From: Octopus bimaculoides
Lineage: Eukaryota
Assembly: GCF_001194135.2 (NCBI RefSeq)
Contig: NC_068981.1
Location: forward strand, 98,929,424 to 98,964,236
Length of the DNA stretch: 34,813 nt
Direction of reading: 5' to 3'
Shown: one piece after another, positions 5,621 through 23,942 of the stretch
How positions within the stretch are numbered: the stretch's first letter is position 1
Layout of the letters: each line of letters starts with the position of its first letter
Made by a program: the position numbers and the translations under genes
The notes under the pieces: model-generated
What the model was told of the DNA's origin: nothing
Databases searched by the model: none
The model's input: only the letters and a program-made list of their open reading frames with translations

Positions 5621-6319
5621 NNNNNNNNNNNNNNNNNNNNNNNNNNNNNNNNNNNNNNNNNNNNNNNNNNNNNNNNNNNNNNNNNNNNNNNNNNNNNNNN
5701 NNNNNNNNNNNNNNNNNNNNNNNNNNNNNNNNNNNNNNNNNNNNNNNNNNNNNNNNNNNNNNNNNNNNNNNNNNNNNNNNNNNNNNNNNNNNNNNNNNNN
5801 NNNNNNNNNNNNNNNNNNNNNNNNNNNNNNNNNNNNNNNNNNNNNNNNNNNNNNNNNNNNNNNNNNNNNNNNNNNNNNNNNNNNNNNNNNNNNNNNNNNN
5901 NNNNNNNNNNNNNNNNNNNNNNNNNNNNNNNNNNNNNNNNNNNNNNNNNNNNNNNNNNNNNNNNNNNNNNNNNNNNNNNNNNNNNNNNNNNNNNNNNNNN
6001 NNNNNNNNNNNNNNNNNNNNNNNNNNNNNNNNNNNNNNNNNNNNNNNNNNNNNNNNNNNNNNNNNNNNNNNNNNNNNNNNNNNNNNNNNNNNNNNNNNNN
6101 NNNNNNNNNNNNNNNNNNNNNNNNNNNNNNNNNNNNNNNNNNNNNNNNNNNNNNNNNNNNNNNNNNNNNNNNNNNNNNNNNNNNNNNNNNNNNNNNNNNN
6201 NNNNNNNNNNNNNNNNNNNNNNNNNNNNNNNNNNNNNNNNNNNNNNNNNNNNNNNNNNNNNNNNNNNNNNNNNNNNNNNNNNNNNNNNNNNNNNNNNNNN
6301 NNNNNNNNNNNNNNNNNNN

Positions 6320-6604: not shown

Positions 6605-6740
6605 GAGTGAGAGAGCAGTGCATGCCATCAAAGTGACAGTGGGGTAAAATATACGAAGCCCAATATACCCATCATGACTACCCGTCTGATAAGGGTACAC
6701 CAGGCACTACTACTACTATTATTATTATTATTATTATTTT

Positions 6741-7082
6741 ATTGCCTTTGCACAGCTTCTAACGCTAGAGATGTACTACGGTGTCAGCTGTTAACTACTA
6801 GTGAACTAAGGTAAAATCCCTTATTTTTCGAGCACCATCCAGAGTATTCGAGCGGTTCCAAGCAGTGCTGTTTTCTGCAAGTGCTCCACCCTTATTGCAG
6901 CCCCTATTTGTTCCATGTACTTCCTCGGGGCTCCGACAATTATTGGTACTACTACCACCTTTTTTTACCAACCACAACTGCTTAACCTCCCAAGCCAACC
7001 AATCATATCTATCGACTTTTCTTTCTTCCTTATCGCATACCTTGTCAGCTGGGCATGCTATATCTATGATCCAGCATCATTT
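6741..7082 (-). mobile_element. 3' fragment of an R4/Dong-like non-LTR retrotransposon (restriction-like endonuclease C-terminus)
   Basis: Minus-strand translation with frameshifts: IIDIACPADKVCDKEE/KVDRYDWLAWEVKQLWLVK/VVVVPIIVGA/..EHLQKTALLGTARILWMVLEK*. This is the typical REL-endonuclease end. Flanked on both sides by (TAA)n arrays. Confidence 0.82.
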
Positions 7083-7092
7083 GATTATTATT

Positions 7093-7167
<75 letters not shown>

Positions 7168-8707
7168 TTCAAGGCTTTGAGCTAACAAAACCGTTGAATC
7201 GTTAGCACACCGGGTATCGATCTAATTGGGACATCCATCCTACTACTAATTTTAATATCGTACTATCGAGATTTGTTTATGTAATAATTAGCCTATACAC
7301 CGTCCAGTTATAGAAGCTCTACATTCTTGAAAAGTTTAGAAGTAATATGGTAGACACTTAACTAGAAAGCGACCAGGAGATATGGATGACAATATCCCTT
7401 TTTGACAAATAATGTTTTAGAGTGAGAATATTTGCTTCTTATTGCTCGTCATTTGTCGGATATCTTCAGTTGATTGAATATCTGAGTGCCATTCTGGTAA
7501 GTCAAGTGAGTCAAGAATGCACTAAGAACATTTGACTGGACATAGAGATAGAGTACTGTTTAGAATGGGAAATCTGCAGATGCAGTTCCAGGTCGGGACT
7601 AATCAAGAAGACCAAGTTCATCCATCTTTAACAGAGTAGAGTGATATTTGAAGGAGATTCAGTTGTTAATTTTAGCAGGTCGAGCTAACTGGAACAGAGG
7701 AGATCAATCTCAACAGCGTCATTCAGCAGACGACGAGACAGCAAACGACGAGAACTGAGAGGTGAGACTTTAAATGTTGACAAGAATTCGAAGAAGATAT
7801 GTTAGTGGAATTTTCAGAACCTGGTTTTTGTGGCCCCCTCTCAGTTGTTTCTCAAGTTTAGTTAAGATGTATTCTTAGTTGAAATAACTAAGTCAAACTA
7901 TAAGGAGTTATAATAGATCCTGAATTACTACTGAATGTATATATGAATATTATACTGTATGAACTTCACAACTTCTCAGTTTCTCTCCCTTTTAAATCTT
8001 ATACTTTTTATCGTTTGTAAGGAATTAATATTTTCTGCCTAAATACTCAAACGCTGCAAATAATAGACCAAAGTAATTTTCAGAAGCAAGAGCTCTTGGA
8101 ACTTGGCCATTTGACCGCACCCACCCACCAACAATGTTGGAAAAAATACAATTACTTTTGGAAAGGATCGCGAATATTATTCCCTTTTCCCACCTCTTTT
8201 AAAATATTCACGTTTGATGATTGTTCTCGTGGACGATTTCTTTTTGTTTTGTTAGTTGCGTACGATTAGCAGTAAGATTGTTTAATGAATTTCGTAGATA
8301 TGATTAAAAGAGAAAAATGATATAATCAGTGAATTTCTGAGAGCAGGGTGGTTATTCATGGACCTTAACAGATATCTCTCAAAGGTGCAGACGACATAGA
8401 GTAAGAATGCTTGGGATGATGGATTTCTTTATACAAATACTAACATGAAAAGAAAGCAAGAATGAAAAAAAGGGAGAAAAACACAAAAGAATTATATATA
8501 AAAAAGGAAAGGTACAAAGAAGAAAAATAAAATTAAACGATGATAGAAAAATGAGGAGAAAATCTTCTAAAAGAAAACGAAAACAAATAGAAGAAACAGA
8601 AGAGGAGAAAGAAGAAAACAAGAGAAAAATGAACTGTTTATCGACATTTAATCTTTTTATTTCATAACGTTGAGATAGTAAAATAAGATAGTAAATATAA
8701 ATAAACC

Positions 8708-8870
8708 CAGGCACAGACATAACTATGGCATAAAGAAGTTTGCTTTGTAACCACGTGGTTCTCACTTCGTTCTCTTAGCGTGGTACGTTGATCAACATTC
8801 TTCGACTATAGTCTCAGTTTGACAAATGCCTCATAAGAGGAATTTTGTAAACGGATTGCTGTACAGGAGC
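8708..8870 (+). mobile_element. Decayed family A SINE head
   Basis: aggcacagacataactatggcataaagaagtttgctttgtaaccacgtggttctc.. aligns by eye with 13779-13935. Confidence 0.6.
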
Positions 8871-9072
8871 ACATCGTGCGTCGTGCATGTGTGTACACAA
8901 ACCGATATGCATATATATGTGTGTGTGTGTGCGAGTATTTAAATATCTACCAAATATTTTGGTAAAATAAGTATTGTAACTGTTACCAAAGTAGCAAAAT
9001 TCTCACATGAAAAGTTGTTTATACTTTGTTTAAATATAATGACTTTCGTATAGGTGATACAATTTTGGGTGC

Positions 9073-9361
9073 ATATCAATTGAAATAAGAGCCATGACGC
9101 AATCCTATATATTAATAAATCTTGATCATTATCCTATGCGCATTTCGATGCAACATCCCGACTGACTCTTGTCTGAGATAAGAAATTAGGGCCTTCCATC
9201 TCTTCAGGGTCAAGTTACTTTAATTCACAAAAAGATGGAAGGCCCTAATTTCTTATCTCAGACAAGAGCGAGTCGGGATCTTGCATCGAAATGCGCATAG
9301 GATAATAAACAAGTTTTATTAATATATAGGATTGCGTCATGGCTCTTATTTCAATTGATAT
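9073..9361. repeat. Long inverted repeat (foldback): 129-bp arms, 31-nt spacer
   Basis: Left arm 9073-9201 is the reverse complement of right arm 9233-9361, with 6 mismatches counted by eye (about 95%). The right end runs into a (TA)n tract. Confidence 0.97.
9129..9213 (-). ncRNA. Minimal type-I hammerhead ribozyme motif (Penelope-like/retrozyme type) with palindromic helix III
   Basis: Minus strand reads UUGACC-CUGAAGA-GAUG[46 nt]CAUC-GAAA-UGCGCAU-A|GGAUAA. All core nucleotides are present: CUGANGA (plus 9201-9207), GAAA (9143-9146), G10.1-C11.1 helix II closure, AUA cleavage triplet. Helix III is the palindrome AUGCGCAU (9136-9143). Helix I is 6 bp with one A-A mismatch and one G-U pair. 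Confidence 0.72.
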
Positions 9362-9954
9362 ATATATATATATATATATATATACCAGAGTAAGTGCATA
9401 AATGTGAAACAAGGTGGGGAAAAATAGTACTCGAATACCGGAGGTAGATGAATATGTTTTATTATTAAAGCTGCAAAAACATCATAAATGTGATGCTGAC
9501 TGGTGAACCAGTTTTTTGGGGTTGCATCGAGCTGTACCAATATAATGTAGGATAAATATAATAATAATAACAATAATCCTGCGCGCATTTCCACAATACA
9601 TGTGTCTCTTAAGATCACAGTCCGTATCCTGGGATGATTACGGTGTAGTCCGTAGGATCCGCGGCTAGTGGGTAGATCATCAGCATGGATTCATTTCTTC
9701 AGGCGATAAAACATTAAGGGATGTTTAACTGAGGGCTGTTTATCCCTTTTGACCAGTGAGGAGGTTGATTGAGTTCTGTGGGTATTTCTGTGTATACTTT
9801 GTGAGAAGGAGGAGGAGAAAGTGATGGAAAAAAGCGAAAGGAATGGTAGTTATATGGAGATGGAGGTGCGTGTGGTGATGTTGGACTTACTTTGCTATTC
9901 AGTCAGCAGATGTCAAGGATGGGTAGTATATTCCTTTGTTCGATCTCATATACA

Positions 9955-10262
9955 TACTTTGGGATTGAAAGCTATACTAATCACTAGAGAGGACGCTATT
10001 GCGTAGTACCAAAGATCCCGCCATCTCCGTCCAGAGTAAAGAACCCAATATTGTTACAGTTTAAAGTTCAAAAGTCCAAAACTTTTCAATATATTGCCAA
10101 AAGGCCTCAGAGGTCCATAAGATGTAGATGTGGATGTGTTCAACTGGACCAATTTTTTATGTAATATGCCAGAGGAACCCACACCATGATAAGAAATATA
10201 AAGAGAGGCAGTTCTGTTCAACCCACTACTTCATCAGGCCGATTCCGGAATCAAAACCAGCC
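9955..10262 (+). mobile_element. 3' ORF2 fragment of a CR1/L2-group LINE
   Basis: GIESYTNH*RGRYCVVPKIPPSPSRVK/SLKFKSPKLFNILPKGLRGP*DVDVDVF..FLCNMPEEPT; LFNxLP..DxFL..xPDEP is the typical post-RT C-terminus. Confidence 0.7.
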
Positions 10263-10682
10263 AGTGAGTTTAAAATACGCAAACATTGGCGTTAATGGTG
10301 ATACCTTTGAATGGTCATAGCCTCAAACTGAAACTGGTAATAGAATAATGGAATATATGTTAGTGCGTTTGTCTGTACCCGTAATTATGTTTATGCGTTT
10401 AACCGCTGGTCACAAAACAAACAAACAAATAATTTGATTAATACAAACAAACAAAACAAAAACAAGAAAACCAGTGTTGTCTTAAAATTGTAAATTAACC
10501 CATCGATAATATGTAAATCGATAAAAACATTACTTGAATGAAATAACTATTTGGAATCACTATAAACTATTAAATAAATAAAAATCCTGAACACAATACC
10601 CCAACAAAGACTCTATCCAAAGTGATTAAACACCTGAAATCATAATTGCCTAAAGAAACCATCACTGTTACGTCATATAAAC

Positions 10683-11154
10683 CAGTGTTTCTCAACAGAA
10701 AAGGGGCTTTAAGGAACGAAAAAGAGGCTTAAAAAGTGCCACGTTTAATACAATTAATAATTTTAAACTCTTCAAAATTGTCCAACATCGTATATAGAAA
10801 AAAGAATGATTTGTTTATCTGTTTAATTGCATAAATCAGATATATCCACTCAAAATTTCATTACACTTTACTGCGCAAAGCAATTTTATATACCAATCTA
10901 TCTTTTGTCGAGGAACTTCATGTTTAAAACTATTTCTTGATAAGATGTTTACTGAGATAAAGCCACTTGAAGAAAATACCAGTTCTATTTTTGATAGATA
11001 TTTAACATCATTACTGGGATAATTATGAAATTTAATTTCACTGTTAAAGGGTTAAACTCTATTTTGTTTCCTCACTGGTAGAAAAGGTGAGTTTCGCTAA
11101 TTTATATTTTTAAAGGAGGAGATTGGTCTGGTATGTGTCCGTTGAAAAGTGCTG
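10683..11154. mobile_element. Possible old non-autonomous hAT (Charlie-like) element
   Basis: Left end CAGTGTTTCTCAAC; right end GTTGAAAAGTGCTG (10/14 match as an inverted repeat); flanking 8-mers ATATAAAC and ATCTAAAT (6/8), consistent with a decayed 8-bp TSD. Confidence 0.45.
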
Positions 11155-11793
11155 ATCTAAATTGTTAATTATAAGTATAATTTGAACCCACTTCTCTCAA
11201 TCATTTCGAGAGAGCTTGGCGAACAGATGAGAGAACCACTACGCGGTCGCTCAGTTTGCTAGAGATAAAAGTCAAATTTGCCTCAAACTCACACCCTGCT
11301 CTTTAAAAACAAAACAAAACAAAAAAAAAAGGTCAGATTGGACAATATAGCCCCTTGAGACACAAAATAACAGGTTAGTCACAACTGGAACACTACAACA
11401 ACAACAGCAACGGCAATAACAACATCTTCGGCACCCCTCTTTAAACACACCATATAAGAAGACTTGAACAGATTGTAAAAATTCTGTACGGTTGATTCAT
11501 TTGTAAGAATCCCACTACAAGCAGTCGTCGTCTGTGTCTTGCTGTGCAATGCTCTGCTATACAACATGTAGACGTAATGAGATCCTCTTTAAGATATACA
11601 AATTGTCTGATATAGATAGAGAAAACCGAAACACATCAAACAAAACAAAACTTAATTGGATTTCAGGGAAATTAATGAGGCAAAATACGGCAGAAAATCT
11701 AGATTAGGTGTTTGTCAGTGTGCGTGTATATGTGTGATTAGGTGTATGTGTGGGCACACACATTTGTGTGTGTGTGTGCGTTTGGGTGCGTGC

Positions 11794-14189: not shown

Positions 14190-14987
14190 TTTCATTATCA
14201 TCTTCTTTCAATTCTGTTTACATTTCTTGCCGAGTGTCTTCTTGACACCTAGAGCAAGAAATGGTAAGCCATTAAAATAAACACACCAAATTGTCCATTT
14301 ATAAAAGTCATGTGATGGAAAAAAGGGGAAGAAAGACAGAGAGAAAAATACAAAATAAAATATAAAGAAGTAAACGAAGAAAATAAAGGGGAAAAAGGGA
14401 ATGAAAATTCACAGCTACAATGCTCTTCTCAATACGTGTGACGTGCCAGTTAAGGCAATCTTTTGCACTTCCTGTATGGATGGTAAGCCAGGGATCATTC
14501 TTAAATAATTTTCAGTTCCTTTTTTGATCATTCCAAGTGCTCCTACAATCACTGATATTGTAACTGTCTTGAGATGCCACATCTTTTCGATTTCGATGAG
14601 CAAATCTTTATATTTTCTGAGTTTATTAAATTCTTTTGCCGAGATATTATGGTCACAAGGTATGTTCAAGTCAATCAATAAACAGACTCTATTGTTTTGG
14701 TCTTTCACAACAATATCTGGTTAATTTGCTTTGATGGTCCAGTCTATACATACTGGGAAGTCCCAAAGAATAGTTACATTTTCTCCCTCAGTTACAGCCT
14801 CATGGTGGTGTTTGTACTACTTGTCGGCAGTTTTATTTTCATAATGCCAACACATTATCCAGTGTAGATATTGGCCAACTCTGTCATGTCTTGATTTGTA
14901 TTCTACAGATGCTAAAATCTTCCATCCAGAGAATAGGTGGTCCACTGTTTCGATCCCATCGGCACTTTGTATCTACACCATTTTTCA
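14190..14987 (-). mobile_element. 3' part of an R4/Dong-like REL-endonuclease LINE (degenerate CCHC knuckle, endonuclease, 3' UTR, (TAA)n tail)
   Basis: KCR../ETVDHLFSGWKILASVEYKSRHDRVGQYLHW..VTILWDF..KAN*PDIVVKDQNNRVCLLIDLNIPCDHNISAKEFNKLRKYKDLLIEIEKMWHLKTVTISVIVGALG..LQ-like EVQKIALTGTSHVLRRAL* (stop at 14415). 3' UTR, then (AAT)n at 14137-14188. The 5' side enters an N gap. Confidence 0.9.
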
Positions 14988-15713
14988 NNNNNNNNNNNNN
15001 NNNNNNNNNNNNNNNNNNNNNNNNNNNNNNNNNNNNNNNNNNNNNNNNNNNNNNNNNNNNNNNNNNNNNNNNNNNNNNNNNNNNNNNNNNNNNNNNNNNN
15101 NNNNNNNNNNNNNNNNNNNNNNNNNNNNNNNNNNNNNNNNNNNNNNNNNNNNNNNNNNNNNNNNNNNNNNNNNNNNNNNNNNNNNNNNNNNNNNNNNNNN
15201 NNNNNNNNNNNNNNNNNNNNNNNNNNNNNNNNNNNNNNNNNNNNNNNNNNNNNNNNNNNNNNNNNNNNNNNNNNNNNNNNNNNNNNNNNNNNNNNNNNNN
15301 NNNNNNNNNNNNNNNNNNNNNNNNNNNNNNNNNNNNNNNNNNNNNNNNNNNNNNNNNNNNNNNNNNNNNNNNNNNNNNNNNNNNNNNNNNNNNNNNNNNN
15401 NNNNNNNNNNNNNNNNNNNNNNNNNNNNNNNNNNNNNNNNNNNNNNNNNNNNNNNNNNNNNNNNNNNNNNNNNNNNNNNNNNNNNNNNNNNNNNNNNNNN
15501 NNNNNNNNTCTCTGTCTCACACTTATTCTCCCACTCACTCTTTCACACATTCTCTTTCACAAACACACACTCTCTCTCCCTCTCTCTTTATCTCTTTCTC
15601 TCTCTTTATCTCTCTCTCTCTCTTTATCTCTCTCTCTCTCTCTTTATCTCTCTCTCTCTCTCACACACACACATGATTTTGATAGTAAGCAATAAATAAA
15701 TAAATAAATTGGA

Positions 15714-21229: not shown

Positions 21230-22118
21230 TTGAAGGTTTATAGAGAACCATGAAATACATAGTTTTCTTTTGAAATTGTATTTTTTTCTGAAGTGGTTAA
21301 TTCTTGAAGATAATGTAAAGTCCAGGTAGGTGTTAATGGAGGTTCTGTGTTTGACGTTAACATCACTTATAAACTATATTCTTTATTATACACTAGTCAA
21401 AACCTCTTCCCCGAGTGTTGTTAGCTAATAATTATATATTTTTGTCAAGAAATGAACGTGCTTTAGAAAAAGCTATCTAGAGTTCATACAACTTGTTCTT
21501 GAGAAAATACTGGTTCACAAAGAAATAATGCAACTTTCTTGAGTGTTTGTCCTTGAGGAATATTATTAGCTATGGAAACCGATCTCTTTCTCTAAAACAA
21601 AAGGTAAAGTGGCATCACTTGGATAGAGTTTGATCCATGGGATTAAACCTTTAATCCTACTCGCACATTACTAATCAACTCTTCTATGCAGATGCCATGT
21701 AGATTAATTCATTGTTATTTCCTTACATAATCCTTACTGGATGGATATATTCAGAACATAATTATTGCTCTAAACCTTTAAATTTAATTTATGAGTCGGT
21801 ATTTACTACAGATAACACTGTCTCCTGTTTCTTTTTAATTTATGTTGAAACACCTTTCACAGATTCGTATTCTAAATTGACATCGAATTTGGAATCTTAA
21901 GAATCTCTAAAATTTCCCCCGTATCTCTTAATTCGTTCTTTTGCTGATCTTCTTTGCTTTTCCTTTGGGACTAAATATGTTATTAAAATTATTGAAATTT
22001 CTTGAAAGAATTACGTATATGATAAACGTTTTAATCAACTTAAAATAGGGAACAGTACCACTCCGTTGTCATAACAAATCTTAATACGAAACTGATAGGC
22101 GCAAGAGTAGCTGTTGCT

Positions 22119-22363
22119 GAGTATTTATGGTGCATTTTAGAAAAGCAAGTAAGGAGTCGATATCCTCCACCATCACTACAAGAACTGGGGACTGTTTTAG
22201 CTGAAGAATGGACAAAAATTCCTTTGGAAACAATTCAAACTTTGTATGAGTTCATACCTCGTGGAATTCAAGCTGTAATTACTACCAAAGGTGGTCCTAC
22301 CCTATATTAGAATAAATTTGTTTGAAATTTTAAGGTTCTTTCCATTATTTTGTCCAACCCCTG
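22119..22363 (+). mobile_element. 3' end of a Tc1-family transposon: transposase C-terminus, right TIR and TA
   Basis: Uninterrupted 63-aa frame EYLWCILEKQVRSRYPPPSLQELGTVLAEEWTKIPLETIQTLYEFIPRGIQAVITTKGGPTLY* (22119-22310). TIR-like ccattattttgtccaacccctg ends at 22363 and is followed by TA. Confidence 0.9.
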
Positions 22364-22371
22364 TATATATA

Positions 22372-22725
22372 TTACTGTACCACTGTACCAAACAGATGAC
22401 CAGATGTTGTCGTACGCCGTTGGCCACAATGCGGTTTAAATTCTTGATTGCCCCATTCTTTTCCACTTTGTCCCAAATCACTTAGCTAAATCGTGTGTAC
22501 CGATCGTCGTAGAGGCCTTCTTTGTGGCTTTTTCCGATCTCTTGGATATCGCTCAGCAACAGCACGGGAACTAATGTTGTGTGTGAATCTTGCGACATGT
22601 CCGGCCCAGCGGAACTTGTATTTACGATATTCTGCGATCACACCGCTCACTCTACTCTGTTCTCGAATTATCGCATTTCGAATATGCTTTCATAAGGGTA
22701 TTCCTAGCATGTATTTTATATAAAC
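22372..22725 (-). mobile_element. 3' end of an RTE-clade LINE
   Basis: MLGIPL*KHIRNAIIREQSRVSGVIAEYRKYKFRWAGHVARFTHNISSRAVAERYPRDRKKPQRRPLRR (RWAGHVAR motif); ends in a short tandem tail (tggtacag)x2. Confidence 0.88.
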
Positions 22726-22727
22726 AT

Positions 22728-23580
22728 ATTTAATAATGCTGCCTCCTGTATAACAATGTCCTCAAAGCTAGTGGATTTAAAGAGGAAATAGGTTATATAC
22801 ACCCATACTATTAGACCAGAAATAAAGAAAAGGAAACATAGACACAGGAAAATTATCTGGTTCACCCCCACCCTTATTCCCTCGAAGTGACTTTTAATAT
22901 ATTTAAATATTTCTTGTCACTTATAGATAGACATTTTCCAATACATCACAAATATAGAAAACTCTTTAATAGGTATAACCTAAAAACTAGTTTTAGTTAA
23001 ACCCCAAATTTTAAAAACACAATCACGCACAATACAGCACAACACCACGAAGCCAGCTGTTCCTGCAGGGATAAAGACATGTGCCCACTAAATAAAGCTT
23101 GTATGACCGAGGCCATAATTTATGAAGCTACTGTAAATTCCACCAACGCTAATAATACAGTTTCATCCAAGAGATATGTGGGTTCCACAGAGAGATATTT
23201 CAAAGCAAGATTTAACAATCACACCTTAAGCTTCAGACACTAGAACAAAGGAAAGACTACTAAATTATCCAGTGATGTATGGTTCTTAGAAGAACAAGGT
23301 GTCAACTACAGTATTTATTGGAAGATCTTAACCAAGTGTAAACCTTATACCAATGGTAGTGGTAAGTGTGGTCTTTGTAATATGGAAAGATAGCTCACCT
23401 GGAAAAGTTTCTTAGACCCCGCTACATGTTTAAATTCAATAACTTAACTCTTTCGATCATGTCTACATGTCCCAAAATACCTATAACGGTTTTGGCCCCC
23501 CCCCCTCAGGATCACAGCTAGAGTCCACATTTCTACTATGTCCCTGCACAAACTTTCCCACACGTTTTAACACCAATAAA
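22728..23580 (+). mobile_element. Penelope-like element 3' fragment (Neptune-type linker plus GIY-YIG endonuclease)
   Basis: FNNAA/YNNVLKASGFKEEI..RHRKIIWFTP/PYS..FKYFLSLIDRHFP..KLFNRYNLKTSFS*TPNF..SCSCRDKDMCPLNKACMTEAIIYEATV..KRYVGSTERYFKARFNNHTLSFRH*..LSSDVW..WKILTKCKPYTNGSGKCGLCNMER*..CLNS..LFRSCLH..YL* (stop 23484-23486). AATAAA at 23575-23580. Confidence 0.9.
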
Positions 23581-23942
23581 ATTTAAATTTTTATTTTTGT
23601 TTTTATATATATTTCCTTGTTTTCCATTTTCCTTTTCATGTGTGTGTATGTGTTTGTATGTCTATGTATGTATGTATATTATATGTATATGTGTGTGTGT
23701 TTATGCATGCCTATGAGTGTAAGACAGTGTCCGGTGCATATGTGCGATTTTCATGTGCACATGCCCCCTTCACCTATATGGATATGCATATGTTTGTACA
23801 TGTGCGGGTGTATGTGTGTGATGGGAGGGCGTATATATGTGTATATAGGTATATTTATACGTATAAATATATGTCTAAATATATATGTATTCTGTTATGT
23901 GTATGCTTGTAAGCACCTATGTGTATATGAGGATGAGGTTGA

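What the first reader, a model, noticed from the sequence alone, without database searches (positions are those of the whole stretch)
9129..9213. Complete minimal hammerhead ribozyme hidden on the minus strand of a foldback
Seen in sequence: the minus strand has every invariant hammerhead nucleotide in type-I order. These are helix I 5' strand UUGACC, CUGAAGA, helix II GAUG/CAUC closing a 46-nt loop, GAAA, loop-less palindromic helix III AUGCGCAU, cleavage triplet AUA (predicted cut between plus coordinates 9135 and 9134), then GGAUAA pairing back to helix I. Established knowledge: minimal type-I hammerheads with a palindromic helix III work as dimers and mark the pseudo-LTRs of Penelope-like elements and derived non-autonomous retrozymes. 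Inference: this is a PLE/retrozyme-derived self-cleaving RNA module in a cephalopod-like genome. The 46-nt loop II is unusually long for the minimal class.
Basis: partly seen in the sequence, partly recalled or inferred. Interest (0 to 1): 0.82.

Follow-up and report, generated by a model that had tools for sequence, protein, structure and literature searches.

The report
Hammerhead ribozyme relic in retroelement foldback
This short stretch has every sequence hallmark of the self-cutting "hammerhead" RNA carried by Penelope-like jumping genes, but it is most likely a dead, truncated copy and an ordinary find in such a genome.

Summary
Minus strand 9213..9129 reads UUGACC-CUGAAGA-GAUG-(46 nt)-CAUC-GAAA-UGCGCA-U-A-GGAUAA, a sequence-complete type-I hammerhead with no helix III. 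It is the only such hit in the window. I expect 0.003 per window by chance, or about 6e-5 if a 6-nt palindrome is required.

It lies 62 nt from the outer end of one arm of a 289-bp foldback (132-nt arms, 95% complementary). The foldback looks like two 5'-truncated retroelement 3' ends joined head to head beside an (AT)13 microsatellite. [quoted passage not shown] The window also holds a PLE-type GIY-YIG endonuclease remnant 14 kb away.

Evidence against:
- No other copy could be retrieved, so there is no test of conservation or covariation.
- The 46-nt helix II insert is atypical.
- The helix II closing stem has a predicted probability of about 0, against 0.83-0.93 in two control PLE hammerheads.
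- The partner arm lacks CUGA, and no tandem copy exists.

The Rfam negative is uninformative, because Rfam also misses the controls.

Verdict: probably a decayed member of a known class (confidence about 0.6). This copy is unlikely to be active. Interest is low to moderate.

The parts
9129..9213 (-). Sequence-complete type-I hammerhead motif without helix III. Helix I 9213-9208 / 9134-9129; CUGAAGA 9207-9201; helix II GAUG 9200-9197 / CAUC 9150-9147; GAA 9146-9144; palindrome AUGCGCAU 9143-9136; A17 9135; predicted cut 9135|9134.
   Evidence: Read directly. Only full descriptor hit in the window. 0.0033 expected per window. 0 in the reversed decoy.
9151..9196 (-). 46-nt insert inside helix II. 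On its own, the 54-nt helix II domain (9200-9147: this insert plus its GAUG/CAUC closing stem) folds into an irregular extended hairpin closed by GAUG/CAUC.
   Evidence: The 54-nt domain has MFE and centroid of -11.2 kcal/mol and z = -0.13 against shuffles. In context the closing stem has probability of about 0.
9073..9204 (-). Left arm of the foldback, read as a 5'-truncated retroelement 3' end. Its 5' end continues into the spacer at least to 9213; its 3' end is at 9073.
   Evidence: Inverted repeat I1, 132 nt, 95% complementary. Arm sequences.
9205..9229 (.). 25-nt unique spacer where the two 5'-truncated copies join. On the minus strand it supplies C3-U4-G5 and the helix I 5' strand.
9230..9361 (+). 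Right arm, the second copy in opposite orientation. It holds GAUG...CAUC-GAAA-UGCGCA-UA-GGAUAA (9234-9305) but has CACAAAAA in place of CUGAAGA, so it has no catalytic 5' box.
   Evidence: It differs from the left arm at 7 positions, including G8 to A.
9358..9384 (.). (AT)13 microsatellite abutting the 3' end of the right arm. It is the likely insertion target.
   Evidence: TRF, sequence. (TA)n bias of PLEs: PMC8557442. Same arrangement in control locus L008.
9571..9703 (-). Possible older, degenerate relative in the same orientation: CCUGAAGAaAUG (9703-9692), then about 100 nt, then GAAAUGCGCgcAGGAUuAU (9591-9573). U16.1 is lost and there is no helix II. Low confidence.
   Evidence: (I3). Chained alignment is reached by 1 of 1000 shuffles and 1 of 888 background windows. 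Score 34.5 against a background maximum of 30.5. Not significant with looser scoring.

Best explanation
The 85-nt stretch is a relic of a Penelope-like-element (PLE) type minimal hammerhead ribozyme.

Shown: all core nucleotides are present in type-I order, with a G10.1-C11.1-closed helix II, an 8-nt self-complementary A15.1...U16.1 segment in place of helix III, and a 5/6 helix I.

Shown: it lies 62 nt from the outer end of one arm of a 289-bp foldback. The two arms share their outer ends, differ at their inner ends, and abut an (AT)13 array.

Inferred: the foldback arose in one PLE-type target-primed reverse transcription event in which both DNA strands were nicked and extended. Each strand copied the last 135-155 nt of the same RNA, which gave two head-to-head, 5'-truncated 3' ends inserted into a (TA)n microsatellite.

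Inferred from the established dimer model (Forster 1988; Cervera and de la Pena 2014): in the source element, two hammerheads pair through the AUGCGCAU palindrome to form an extended helix III. Each core then cuts after A17, which processes multimeric or tandem transcripts.

Inferred: at this locus the motif is probably inert. Only the left copy keeps CUGA. There is no second complete motif in 34.8 kb. A read-through transcript would fold into a 132-bp hairpin. The 46-nt helix II insert favours a competing fold.
For: - The motif is complete and is the only hit in the window. Expectation is 0.0033 per window at the loose setting and about 6e-5 with a 6-nt palindrome. The reversed decoy gives none.
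- The foldback has common outer ends, unequal inner ends and an (AT)13 flank.
- Control locus L008 holds a homologue of the window's EN remnant. It has head-to-head arms 9391-9959 / 10667-11235 at 99% complementarity. It also has two solo fragments of about 100 nt, each with a textbook minimal hammerhead 29-43 nt from a 3' end that abuts (TA)n.
- Literature. PLE insertions are highly 5'-truncated, often with an adjacent inverted 5'-truncated copy. Hammerheads sit near their 3' ends, and they favour (TA)n targets (PMC8557442). Paired minimal hammerheads on opposite strands 100-700 bp apart occur in S. mansoni (PMC4209133). A PLE protein nicks and extends both strands, and its hammerhead cut site lies about 85-92 nt upstream of the RT start sites (PMC11167929).
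- PLEs inhabit this genome. A GIY-YIG remnant lies at 22936-23612. It has 1443 homologues, and 8 of 50 aligned homologues hit Pfam GIY-YIG, best E = 6.7e-7.
- The dimer MFE uses the AUGCGCAU intermolecular duplex.
- A possible diverged second copy keeps just the two catalytic boxes.
Against: - No other copy of the arm could be retrieved, so there is no test of conservation or covariation.
- The hammerhead-compatible monomer fold is -12.8 kcal/mol against an MFE of -21.3. The helix II closing pairs have probability of about 0. The domain-swapped dimer hammerhead is -40.1 against a dimer MFE of -48.7. Two control PLE hammerheads give 0.83-0.93 for helix II.
- The two boxes are 54 nt apart and no base is bulged after A9. 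The controls have 11 and 18 nt plus a bulge, and the published class has 6-8 bp of helix II.
- No RT or EN domain lies within 6700-11640 in any frame. The window's PLE remnant has an unrelated 3' end and no hammerhead.
- TA dinucleotides flanking TCAATTG...CAATTGA would also fit a TA-targeting MITE.
- The similarity to the possible second copy disappears under looser alignment scoring.
Confidence: 0.6

Rival explanations
1. Chance motif in an unrelated foldback repeat. The 289-bp palindrome would be a miniature inverted-repeat (foldback) DNA transposon that targets TA. The hammerhead boxes would be coincidental, with CUG and helix I contributed by loop sequence that has no function.
For: - TA dinucleotides flank TCAATTG...CAATTGA, and the right flank is (AT)13.
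- No RT or EN domain lies nearby.
- The hammerhead fold is not favoured thermodynamically (z = -0.58; helix II probability about 0).
- The helix II domain is no more stable than shuffles.
- The relaxed descriptor gave one look-alike with a long spacer and a 6-nt palindrome in control DNA (L008 16411).
- At 0.0033 per 35 kb, a genome of several Gb holds hundreds of loose chance hits.
Against: - Expectation for this one window is 0.0033 at the loosest setting and about 6e-5 with the palindrome. Decoys give none.
- The motif's orientation puts the 5' ends at the centre, and it lies about 60 nt from the outer end. Both match what a PLE 3' end predicts.
- The termini do not resemble the Tc1/mariner, hAT or piggyBac ends I know. 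This rests on my own knowledge and was not tested.
- The TA flanks carry no information inside a TA repeat.
Confidence: 0.28
2. Active non-LTR retrozyme locus. The element would be transcribed, self-cleave and circularise into a small circRNA that spreads by retrotransposition.
For: Type-I hammerheads in molluscs and other animals are mostly carried by such elements (PMC7229834). Retrozymes are proposed to derive from PLE pLTRs (bioRxiv 10.64898/2026.07.22.740005).
Against: - Retrozymes are tandem direct repeats of about 170-400 bp. Here there is no direct repeat, only an inverted pair.
- There is only one complete core.
- The cis partner is on the opposite strand and lacks CUGA.
Confidence: 0.03
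3. The functional unit is the hairpin and not the hammerhead. Read-through transcription would give a 132-bp near-perfect dsRNA that is a substrate for Dicer or ADAR, and the hammerhead would be irrelevant. This reading is compatible with either origin.
For: The 316-nt minus-strand transcript folds at -219 kcal/mol into one hairpin. Rfam gives only generic hairpin and miRNA-precursor matches below threshold.
Against: No Rfam family reaches its gathering score. There is no evidence of transcription, and nothing sets this apart from any inverted repeat.
Confidence: 0.08

Closest known systems
Minimal (dimeric) hammerheads of Penelope-like elements (Cervera and de la Pena 2014, PMC4209133; Lunse, Weinberg and Breaker 2017, cited in PMC6765202)
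   Same: Type-I order, full catalytic core and a G10.1-C11.1 pair. The palindromic 15.x-16.x segment replaces a helix III hairpin. Helix I is short and imperfect. The motif lies near the 3' end of a 5'-truncated insertion, and a partner copy sits on the opposite strand about 100 bp away.
   Different: There is no unpaired base between A9 and G10.1. Helix II is a 4-bp stem carrying a 46-nt irregular insert instead of a compact 6-8 bp. The palindrome is 6 nt where 0-4 is usual. No PLE ORF adjoins it, and family-level conservation is unknown.
Double-hammerhead of newt satellite 2 and avocado sunblotch viroid (Forster et al. 1988, as cited)
   Same: A weak or absent helix III is rescued when two copies pair through a self-complementary segment. 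The predicted dimer MFE of this sequence uses that duplex.
   Different: Those RNAs are made as tandem multimers, which supply the second copy in cis. This locus has no tandem copy.
Metazoan non-LTR retrozymes (Cervera and de la Pena 2020, PMC7229834)
   Same: A type-I hammerhead in a short non-coding, AT-rich repeat of an invertebrate-like genome.
   Different: Retrozymes are head-to-tail tandem repeats with loop-loop tertiary contacts. This is an inverted pair with a single intact core.
'HHR_half_core' motifs of Naiad PLEs (Craig et al. 2021, PMC8557442, Methods)
   Same: CUGANGA and GAAA boxes lie in a PLE 3' region at unusually long distance (35-50 nt there, 54 nt here), so they escape the standard descriptors.
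   Different: In those cases no convincing stems were reported. Here the boxes are bracketed by a G-C-closed 4-bp helix II, a palindromic helix III segment and helix I. No link of this element to Naiads was shown.
Foldback / MITE-type DNA transposons
   Same: A short non-coding element that is an almost perfect palindrome, flanked by TA.
   Different: The inner ends are asymmetric. A complete ribozyme core is oriented from the centre outwards. The termini are not ones I recognise. No copies were available to test for TIR/TSD behaviour.

Membership tests
Hammerhead ribozyme (any type) | Invariant core in order: C3 U4 G5 A6 N7 G8 A9 ... G12 A13 A14, A15.1-U16.1, H17 not G | tested here: met
   CUGAAGA 9207-9201; GAA 9146-9144; A15.1 9143; U16.1 9136; A17 9135.
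Hammerhead ribozyme (any type) | Three helices around the core, with helix II closed by G10.1-C11.1 | tested here: inconclusive
   Helix II has 4 Watson-Crick pairs with G10.1-C11.1, and helix I forms 5 of 6 pairs. Helix III is possible only between two molecules.
Hammerhead ribozyme (any type) | The hammerhead fold is a favoured structure of the RNA | tested here: not met
   Hammerhead fold -12.8 against MFE -21.3 kcal/mol; helix II pair probability about 0; z = -0.58. Two control PLE hammerheads give 0.83-0.93. Tertiary contacts and co-transcriptional folding are not modelled.
Hammerhead ribozyme (any type) | Match to an Rfam hammerhead covariance model | tested here: not met
   No hit at gathering score, nor at E<=10 on 601 nt or 107 nt. 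The test is uninformative for this class, because Rfam also misses both textbook minimal hammerheads of control locus L008.
Hammerhead ribozyme (any type) | Conservation of the core and covariation in the helices among homologues | not testable with these tools
   No second copy in the window. No hit in the protein, metagenome or exact-ORF look-ups. The two arms differ only at unpaired positions and at G8.
Hammerhead ribozyme (any type) | Site-specific self-cleavage after H17 | not testable with these tools
   Needs in vitro transcription of monomer and dimer constructs.
PLE minimal (dimeric) hammerhead | Palindromic 15.x-16.x segment or loop 3 that allows a dimeric helix III | tested here: met
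   AUGCGCAU is self-complementary over 8 nt, and the dimer MFE uses this duplex.
PLE minimal (dimeric) hammerhead | Unpaired nucleotide between A9 and G10.1 and a compact 6-8 bp helix II | tested here: not met
   There is no bulge, and helix II is a 4-bp stem plus a 46-nt insert. Controls have a 1-nt bulge and 11 or 18 nt between the boxes.
PLE minimal (dimeric) hammerhead | Lies in the pLTR / near the 3' end of a PLE insertion | tested here: inconclusive
   The architecture fits: head-to-head truncated copies, 62 nt to the outer end, an (AT)13 flank, and the same layout in L008. However, no RT or EN domain lies within 2.5 kb, and the window's PLE remnant has a different 3' end.
PLE minimal (dimeric) hammerhead | A second motif nearby (in tandem or within 50 kb) to form the dimer | tested here: not met
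   Only one complete motif in 34.8 kb. The neighbouring copy is on the other strand and lacks CUGA.
Metazoan non-LTR retrozyme | Head-to-tail tandem repeats of about 170-400 bp, each with a type-I hammerhead | tested here: not met
   No direct repeat of the unit.
Foldback / MITE DNA transposon | Terminal inverted repeats bounded by a target-site duplication, with many copies sharing the same ends | tested here: inconclusive
   The inverted arms are present. TA/TA flanks are possible but meaningless next to (AT)13. Copy number is not testable.

The most novel reading that the evidence does not exclude
The element may represent a PLE-associated hammerhead class whose helix II carries a structured insert of about 50 nt, so that the two catalytic boxes lie 54 nt apart. 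Such a class would escape Rfam and the RNAmotif descriptors in use. It could be what the unexplained 'HHR_half_core' motifs in PLE clades said to lack hammerheads really are. If the family is conserved and cleaves as a dimer, hammerheads would be more universal in PLEs than currently thought. The alternative fold that sequesters CUG would then act as an on/off switch.
Probability: 0.1. Interest if true: 0.55.

Novelty: new member of a known kind. Interest (0 to 1): 0.3.

Why it matters
If real, it adds one more example, possibly from a cephalopod, to a class known since 2014 and present in thousands of copies per genome. That is useful for repeat annotation, and it shows how PLE insertions create foldbacks that confuse assemblies and MITE finders.

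Two points have some wider value:
- Rfam's hammerhead models miss this candidate. They also miss two textbook minimal PLE hammerheads in a control locus. Routine Infernal/Rfam annotation is therefore blind to this class.
- A hammerhead core split by a 46-nt helix II insert, if conserved in a family, would widen the search space that should be used for PLE ribozymes.

Nothing here bears on a long-standing open question.

Tried and rejected
- Rfam at gathering and at E<=10 on 601 nt and 107 nt gave no hammerhead, only generic hairpin matches. I treat this negative as uninformative after the control.
- A six-frame pseudo-protein of the element against the 5.8-billion-protein index gave nothing.
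- Exact 21- and 22-mers of the element against the metagenome contigs gave 0 hits.
- An 18-base box pattern against the viral contigs gave two hits, both phage coding sequence with no further similarity, so chance.
- Exact-ORF look-ups of four window ORFs, three of them overlapping or next to the element and one the distant PLA2 ORF at 31092-32585, found nothing on record.
- Searching with the PLA2 exon to identify the organism gave nothing. Searching papers for the SRA run prefix gave an irrelevant paper. The source organism remains unverified.
- Six-frame Pfam over 6700-11640 gave no domain.
- tRNA/SINE origin is not supported, since ARAGORN finds no tRNA in the window.
- I considered that the AUG in stem II opens the N-terminus of a PLE ORF, as in the Anolis element. 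The frame has one stop in 88 codons, but 11.5% of random frames in this window do as well, so I dropped the idea.
- Region B (9571-9703) as a second copy is kept only as a possibility, because its significance depends on the scoring scheme.
- Further PLE loci (L007, L009-L011) held no hammerhead by the descriptor.
- A profile of the EN family against PDB sequences gave no match.

Full report
THE OBSERVATION. On the minus strand, 9213..9129 reads UUGACC CUGAAGA GAUG (46 nt) CAUC GAAA UGCGCA U A GGAUAA. In hammerhead numbering, C3-A9 is 9207-9201. Helix II is 9200-9197 paired with 9150-9147 and includes the conserved G10.1-C11.1 pair. G12-A14 is 9146-9144, A15.1 is 9143, U16.1 is 9136 and A17 is 9135. 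A15.1 through U16.1 spells AUGCGCAU, an 8-nt palindrome that cannot form a hairpin but can pair with a second copy. Helix I forms 5 of 6 pairs and can be extended by CUUGA/UCAAG after a 7-nt bulge. The stretch lies in a 289-bp foldback with arms 9073-9204 and 9230-9361, each 132 nt, 95% complementary, separated by 25 nt.

IS IT MORE THAN CHANCE? I wrote a type-I minimal-hammerhead descriptor. It requires CUGANGA, 0-1 bulged base, a helix II of at least 4 bp, a loop of up to 60 nt, GAAA, A15.1-(palindrome of 0-8 nt)-U16.1-H17, and a helix I with at least 4 of 6 pairs including the first two. The window holds exactly one full hit, the finding itself. The reversed-sequence decoy holds none. In 3000 first-order Markov simulations of the window the mean was 0.0033 full hits. 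Hits with a palindrome of 6 nt or more make up about 1.8% of that (shares), or roughly 6e-5 per window. The same descriptor recovers real PLE hammerheads in a control locus (see below). The motif is real and improbable for one window. At the loose setting, a genome of several Gb would still hold hundreds of chance matches, so context matters.

THE SURROUNDINGS. Read from the centre outwards, the two arms are the same sequence. Both contain GAUG...CAUC-GAAA-UGCGCA-UA-GGAUAA followed by a 56-nt tail ending ...CAAUUGAUAU. They differ at 7 positions: three at unpaired positions of the helix II insert, three in the tail, and G8 to A. The inner ends are unequal. On the minus strand the left copy continues through CUG and the helix I strand into the 25-nt spacer. 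The right copy has CACAAAAA where CUGAAGA should be. The right arm's outer end runs straight into (AT)13. No other copy of the element exists in the window. No Pfam domain is found in any frame between 6700 and 11640, and there is no tRNA-like sequence. About 210 nt beyond the right arm, on the same strand as the complete motif, 9703..9573 holds CCUGAAGAaAUG and, about 100 nt further on, GAAAUGCGCgcAGGAUuAU. That chained similarity is reached by 1 of 1000 shuffles and 1 of 888 background windows. It is not significant under looser scoring, so I keep it only as a possible old relative.

WHAT THE LITERATURE SAYS.
- Type-I hammerheads of animals have a 1-2 bp helix III capped by a palindromic loop and work as dimers. 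Minimal versions without helix III are conserved in the pseudo-LTRs of Penelope-like elements. Their recurrent traits are a bulged base after A9, G10.1-C11.1, a 6-8 bp helix II, a short helix I and palindromic 15.x-16.x. In S. mansoni, pairs of such motifs 100-700 bp apart on opposite strands were noted (PMC4209133; review PMC6765202).
- PLE insertions are strongly 5'-truncated and often carry an adjacent inverted 5'-truncated copy that creates inverted repeats. Their hammerheads sit near the 3' end, and they show a microsatellite bias: (TA)n in Naiads, and hypothesised for Neptune. Some PLEs have the two catalytic boxes 35-50 nt apart ('HHR_half_core') (PMC8557442).
- A purified PLE protein nicks and extends both DNA strands. 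Reverse transcription starts 111-118 nt into the ORF, while the hammerhead cut site is 26 nt into it, so the ribozyme lies about 85-92 nt from the insertion's 3' end (PMC11167929).
- PLEs are abundant in coleoid cephalopods. I could not verify that the window is from a cephalopod.

RELATED SEQUENCES FROM ELSEWHERE. No copy of the element itself could be found. A six-frame pseudo-protein search, two exact-word scans of the metagenome contigs and three exact-ORF look-ups of ORFs overlapping or next to the element were empty. Two viral hits were chance matches in phage genes.

The window did give an indirect route. ORF 23001-23240 (+) has a weak GIY-YIG match (E = 0.024, below cut-off) preceded by a CxC...C...C motif. 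A full HMMER search found 1443 homologues. Eight of 50 aligned homologues hit Pfam GIY-YIG (best 6.7e-7). By my own reading, not a tool result, one homologue (P0073) carries an RT-C-terminal-like stretch upstream. I read this as the remnant of a PLE with a C-terminal endonuclease. It is 76% identical over 684 bp to Logan contigs whose 3' end abuts (TA)n. Its own 3' end carries no hammerhead and is unrelated to the foldback arms. It shows that PLEs live in this genome, not that it is the parent element.

One homologue lies in a 976-kb eukaryotic contig (L008), which served as a positive control. That PLE copy is built as head-to-head inverted arms, 9391-9959 / 10667-11235 at 99% complementarity, with common outer ends. 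Next to it, two solo fragments of about 100 nt each carry a textbook minimal hammerhead: CUGAUGA-A-GGC-UUGU-GCC-GAAA-CG-UU and CUGAUGA-U-GGUUUG...CCAAGCC-GAAA-CAUG-UC. These lie 29 and 43 nt from a 3' end that abuts a (TA)n array. The foldback in the window has the same layout on a smaller scale.

TESTS THAT COUNT AGAINST THE HAMMERHEAD.
- Rfam finds no hammerhead at gathering score or at E<=10, even on 107 nt. Rfam also misses both control hammerheads in L008, so this negative says nothing about the minimal class.
- Folding is more telling. The hammerhead-compatible monomer is -12.8 kcal/mol against an MFE of -21.3. The MFE pairs CCUGA (9208-9204, covering C3-A6) with UCGGG inside the insert and locks GAAA into the loop of an AUGUUGCAU/AUGCGCAU hairpin. 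The helix II closing pairs have a probability of about 0. The domain-swapped dimer hammerhead is -40.1 against a dimer MFE of -48.7, although that MFE does use the palindrome duplex.
- The helix II domain alone closes with GAUG/CAUC but is no more stable than shuffles (z = -0.13). In the two controls, helix II has a probability of 0.83-0.93.
- A transcript that spans both arms folds into one hairpin of -219 kcal/mol.
- The motif also lacks the bulged base and has 54 nt between the boxes, against 11 and 18 nt in the controls.

MOST LIKELY EXPLANATION (confidence about 0.6). The foldback is the product of one PLE-type integration into a (TA)n tract, in which both nicked strands primed cDNA synthesis on the 3' end of the same RNA. 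This gave two head-to-head 5'-truncated copies, one long enough to keep the whole hammerhead and the other cut off or decayed at CUGA. In the source element the hammerhead would act as a dimer through the AUGCGCAU palindrome and cut after A17. The following are shown: the sequence anatomy, the chance statistics, the arm architecture and its match to a real PLE locus. The following are inferred: the integration mechanism, the dimer mechanism and the PLE parentage. This particular copy is probably inert.

RIVALS.
- A chance motif in a TA-targeting foldback transposon (about 0.28). This is favoured by the poor folding, the atypical helix II, the TA flanks and the lack of a nearby ORF. It is disfavoured by the statistics and by the orientation and position of the motif.
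- An active retrozyme (about 0.03). This fails for lack of any tandem repeat.
- The hairpin itself as a dsRNA source (about 0.08). This is compatible with either origin and is untested.

COMPARISON AND NOVELTY. In working principle it resembles the PLE minimal hammerheads and the classical double-hammerheads. As a member of that class it meets the core, G10.1-C11.1 and palindrome criteria. It fails the bulge, compact-helix-II and nearby-partner criteria. It cannot be tested for family conservation or cleavage. I file it as a probable new, decayed member of a known kind. The only unusual trait is the 46-nt helix II insert, which recalls the unexplained long-spacer 'half-core' motifs of some PLEs. 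The interest is modest. The decisive step, collecting genomic copies from the source assembly, could not be done with the collections at hand.

Noticed in passing
window 22936-23612 (+), ORF 23001-23240: Remnant of a GIY-YIG endonuclease ORF with an upstream Cys-rich (CxC..C..C) motif, read as a Penelope-like element with a C-terminal EN. It has 1443 homologues in the representative library, and 8 of 50 aligned homologues hit Pfam GIY-YIG. It is 76% identical over 684 bp to Logan contigs SRR11869384/90/91/94. Its 3' end runs into low-complexity TA/TG sequence and has no hammerhead.
   Followed up: partly
L008 9391-11235 and 11424-11730 (ENA ERZ25067903, 976-kb contig): Control PLE locus. It has head-to-head inverted arms (569 nt, 99% complementary) and two solo fragments with textbook minimal hammerheads whose 3' ends abut a long (TA)n array. 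Rfam hammerhead models detect neither, even at E<=10.
   Followed up: yes
L008 11163-11200 (+): A third hammerhead-like stretch, about 40-70 nt from the 3' end of the PLE arm: CUGAUGA-GUGC-UUAG-GCAC-GAAG-CUC. It has G where A15.1 is expected, so my descriptor does not call it. It may be this PLE's own variant ribozyme.
   Followed up: no
window 9571-9703 (-): CCUGAAGAaAUG and GAAAUGCGCgcAGGAUuAU lie about 100 nt apart on the same strand as the complete motif. This may be a degenerate older copy of a related element. Its significance depends on the alignment scoring.
   Followed up: partly
window ~32390-32582 (+): Exon-like stretch matching Pfam Phospholip_A2_2 (E = 1e-24), with the PGTKWCG and CCREHDYC motifs of group-III-type PLA2. 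It is a host gene fragment. No homologue was found in the word-indexed protein search.
   Followed up: partly
window 22201-22260 (+): CUGAAGA...GAAA with a short helix II but no helix III or cleavage site. It lies inside a Tc1/mariner-like ORF and is a chance partial match.
   Followed up: yes
window 22044-22307 (+), 22489-22689 (-), 14418-14720 (-): ORF fragments that by eye resemble a Tc1/mariner transposase C-terminus and two LINE ORF2 C-termini ('WAGHVAR', 'PDIVV...GALG'). Pfam gave no hit, so these identifications rest on my own knowledge only.
   Followed up: partly
window, ten runs of N (e.g. 5621-6319, 14988-15508, 25562-26281): 4357 bases are masked as N. The window is otherwise very rich in microsatellites (72 TRF rows) and AT-rich (GC mostly 0.2-0.4), typical of a large invertebrate genome. 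The organism was not identified.
   Followed up: no
window 9199-8951 (-): The AUG inside stem II opens a frame with a single stop (the UAG of the cleavage triplet) in 88 codons. This recalls the Anolis PLE, whose ORF starts in stem II. However, 11.5% of random frames in this window are as open, so it is not significant.
   Followed up: yes
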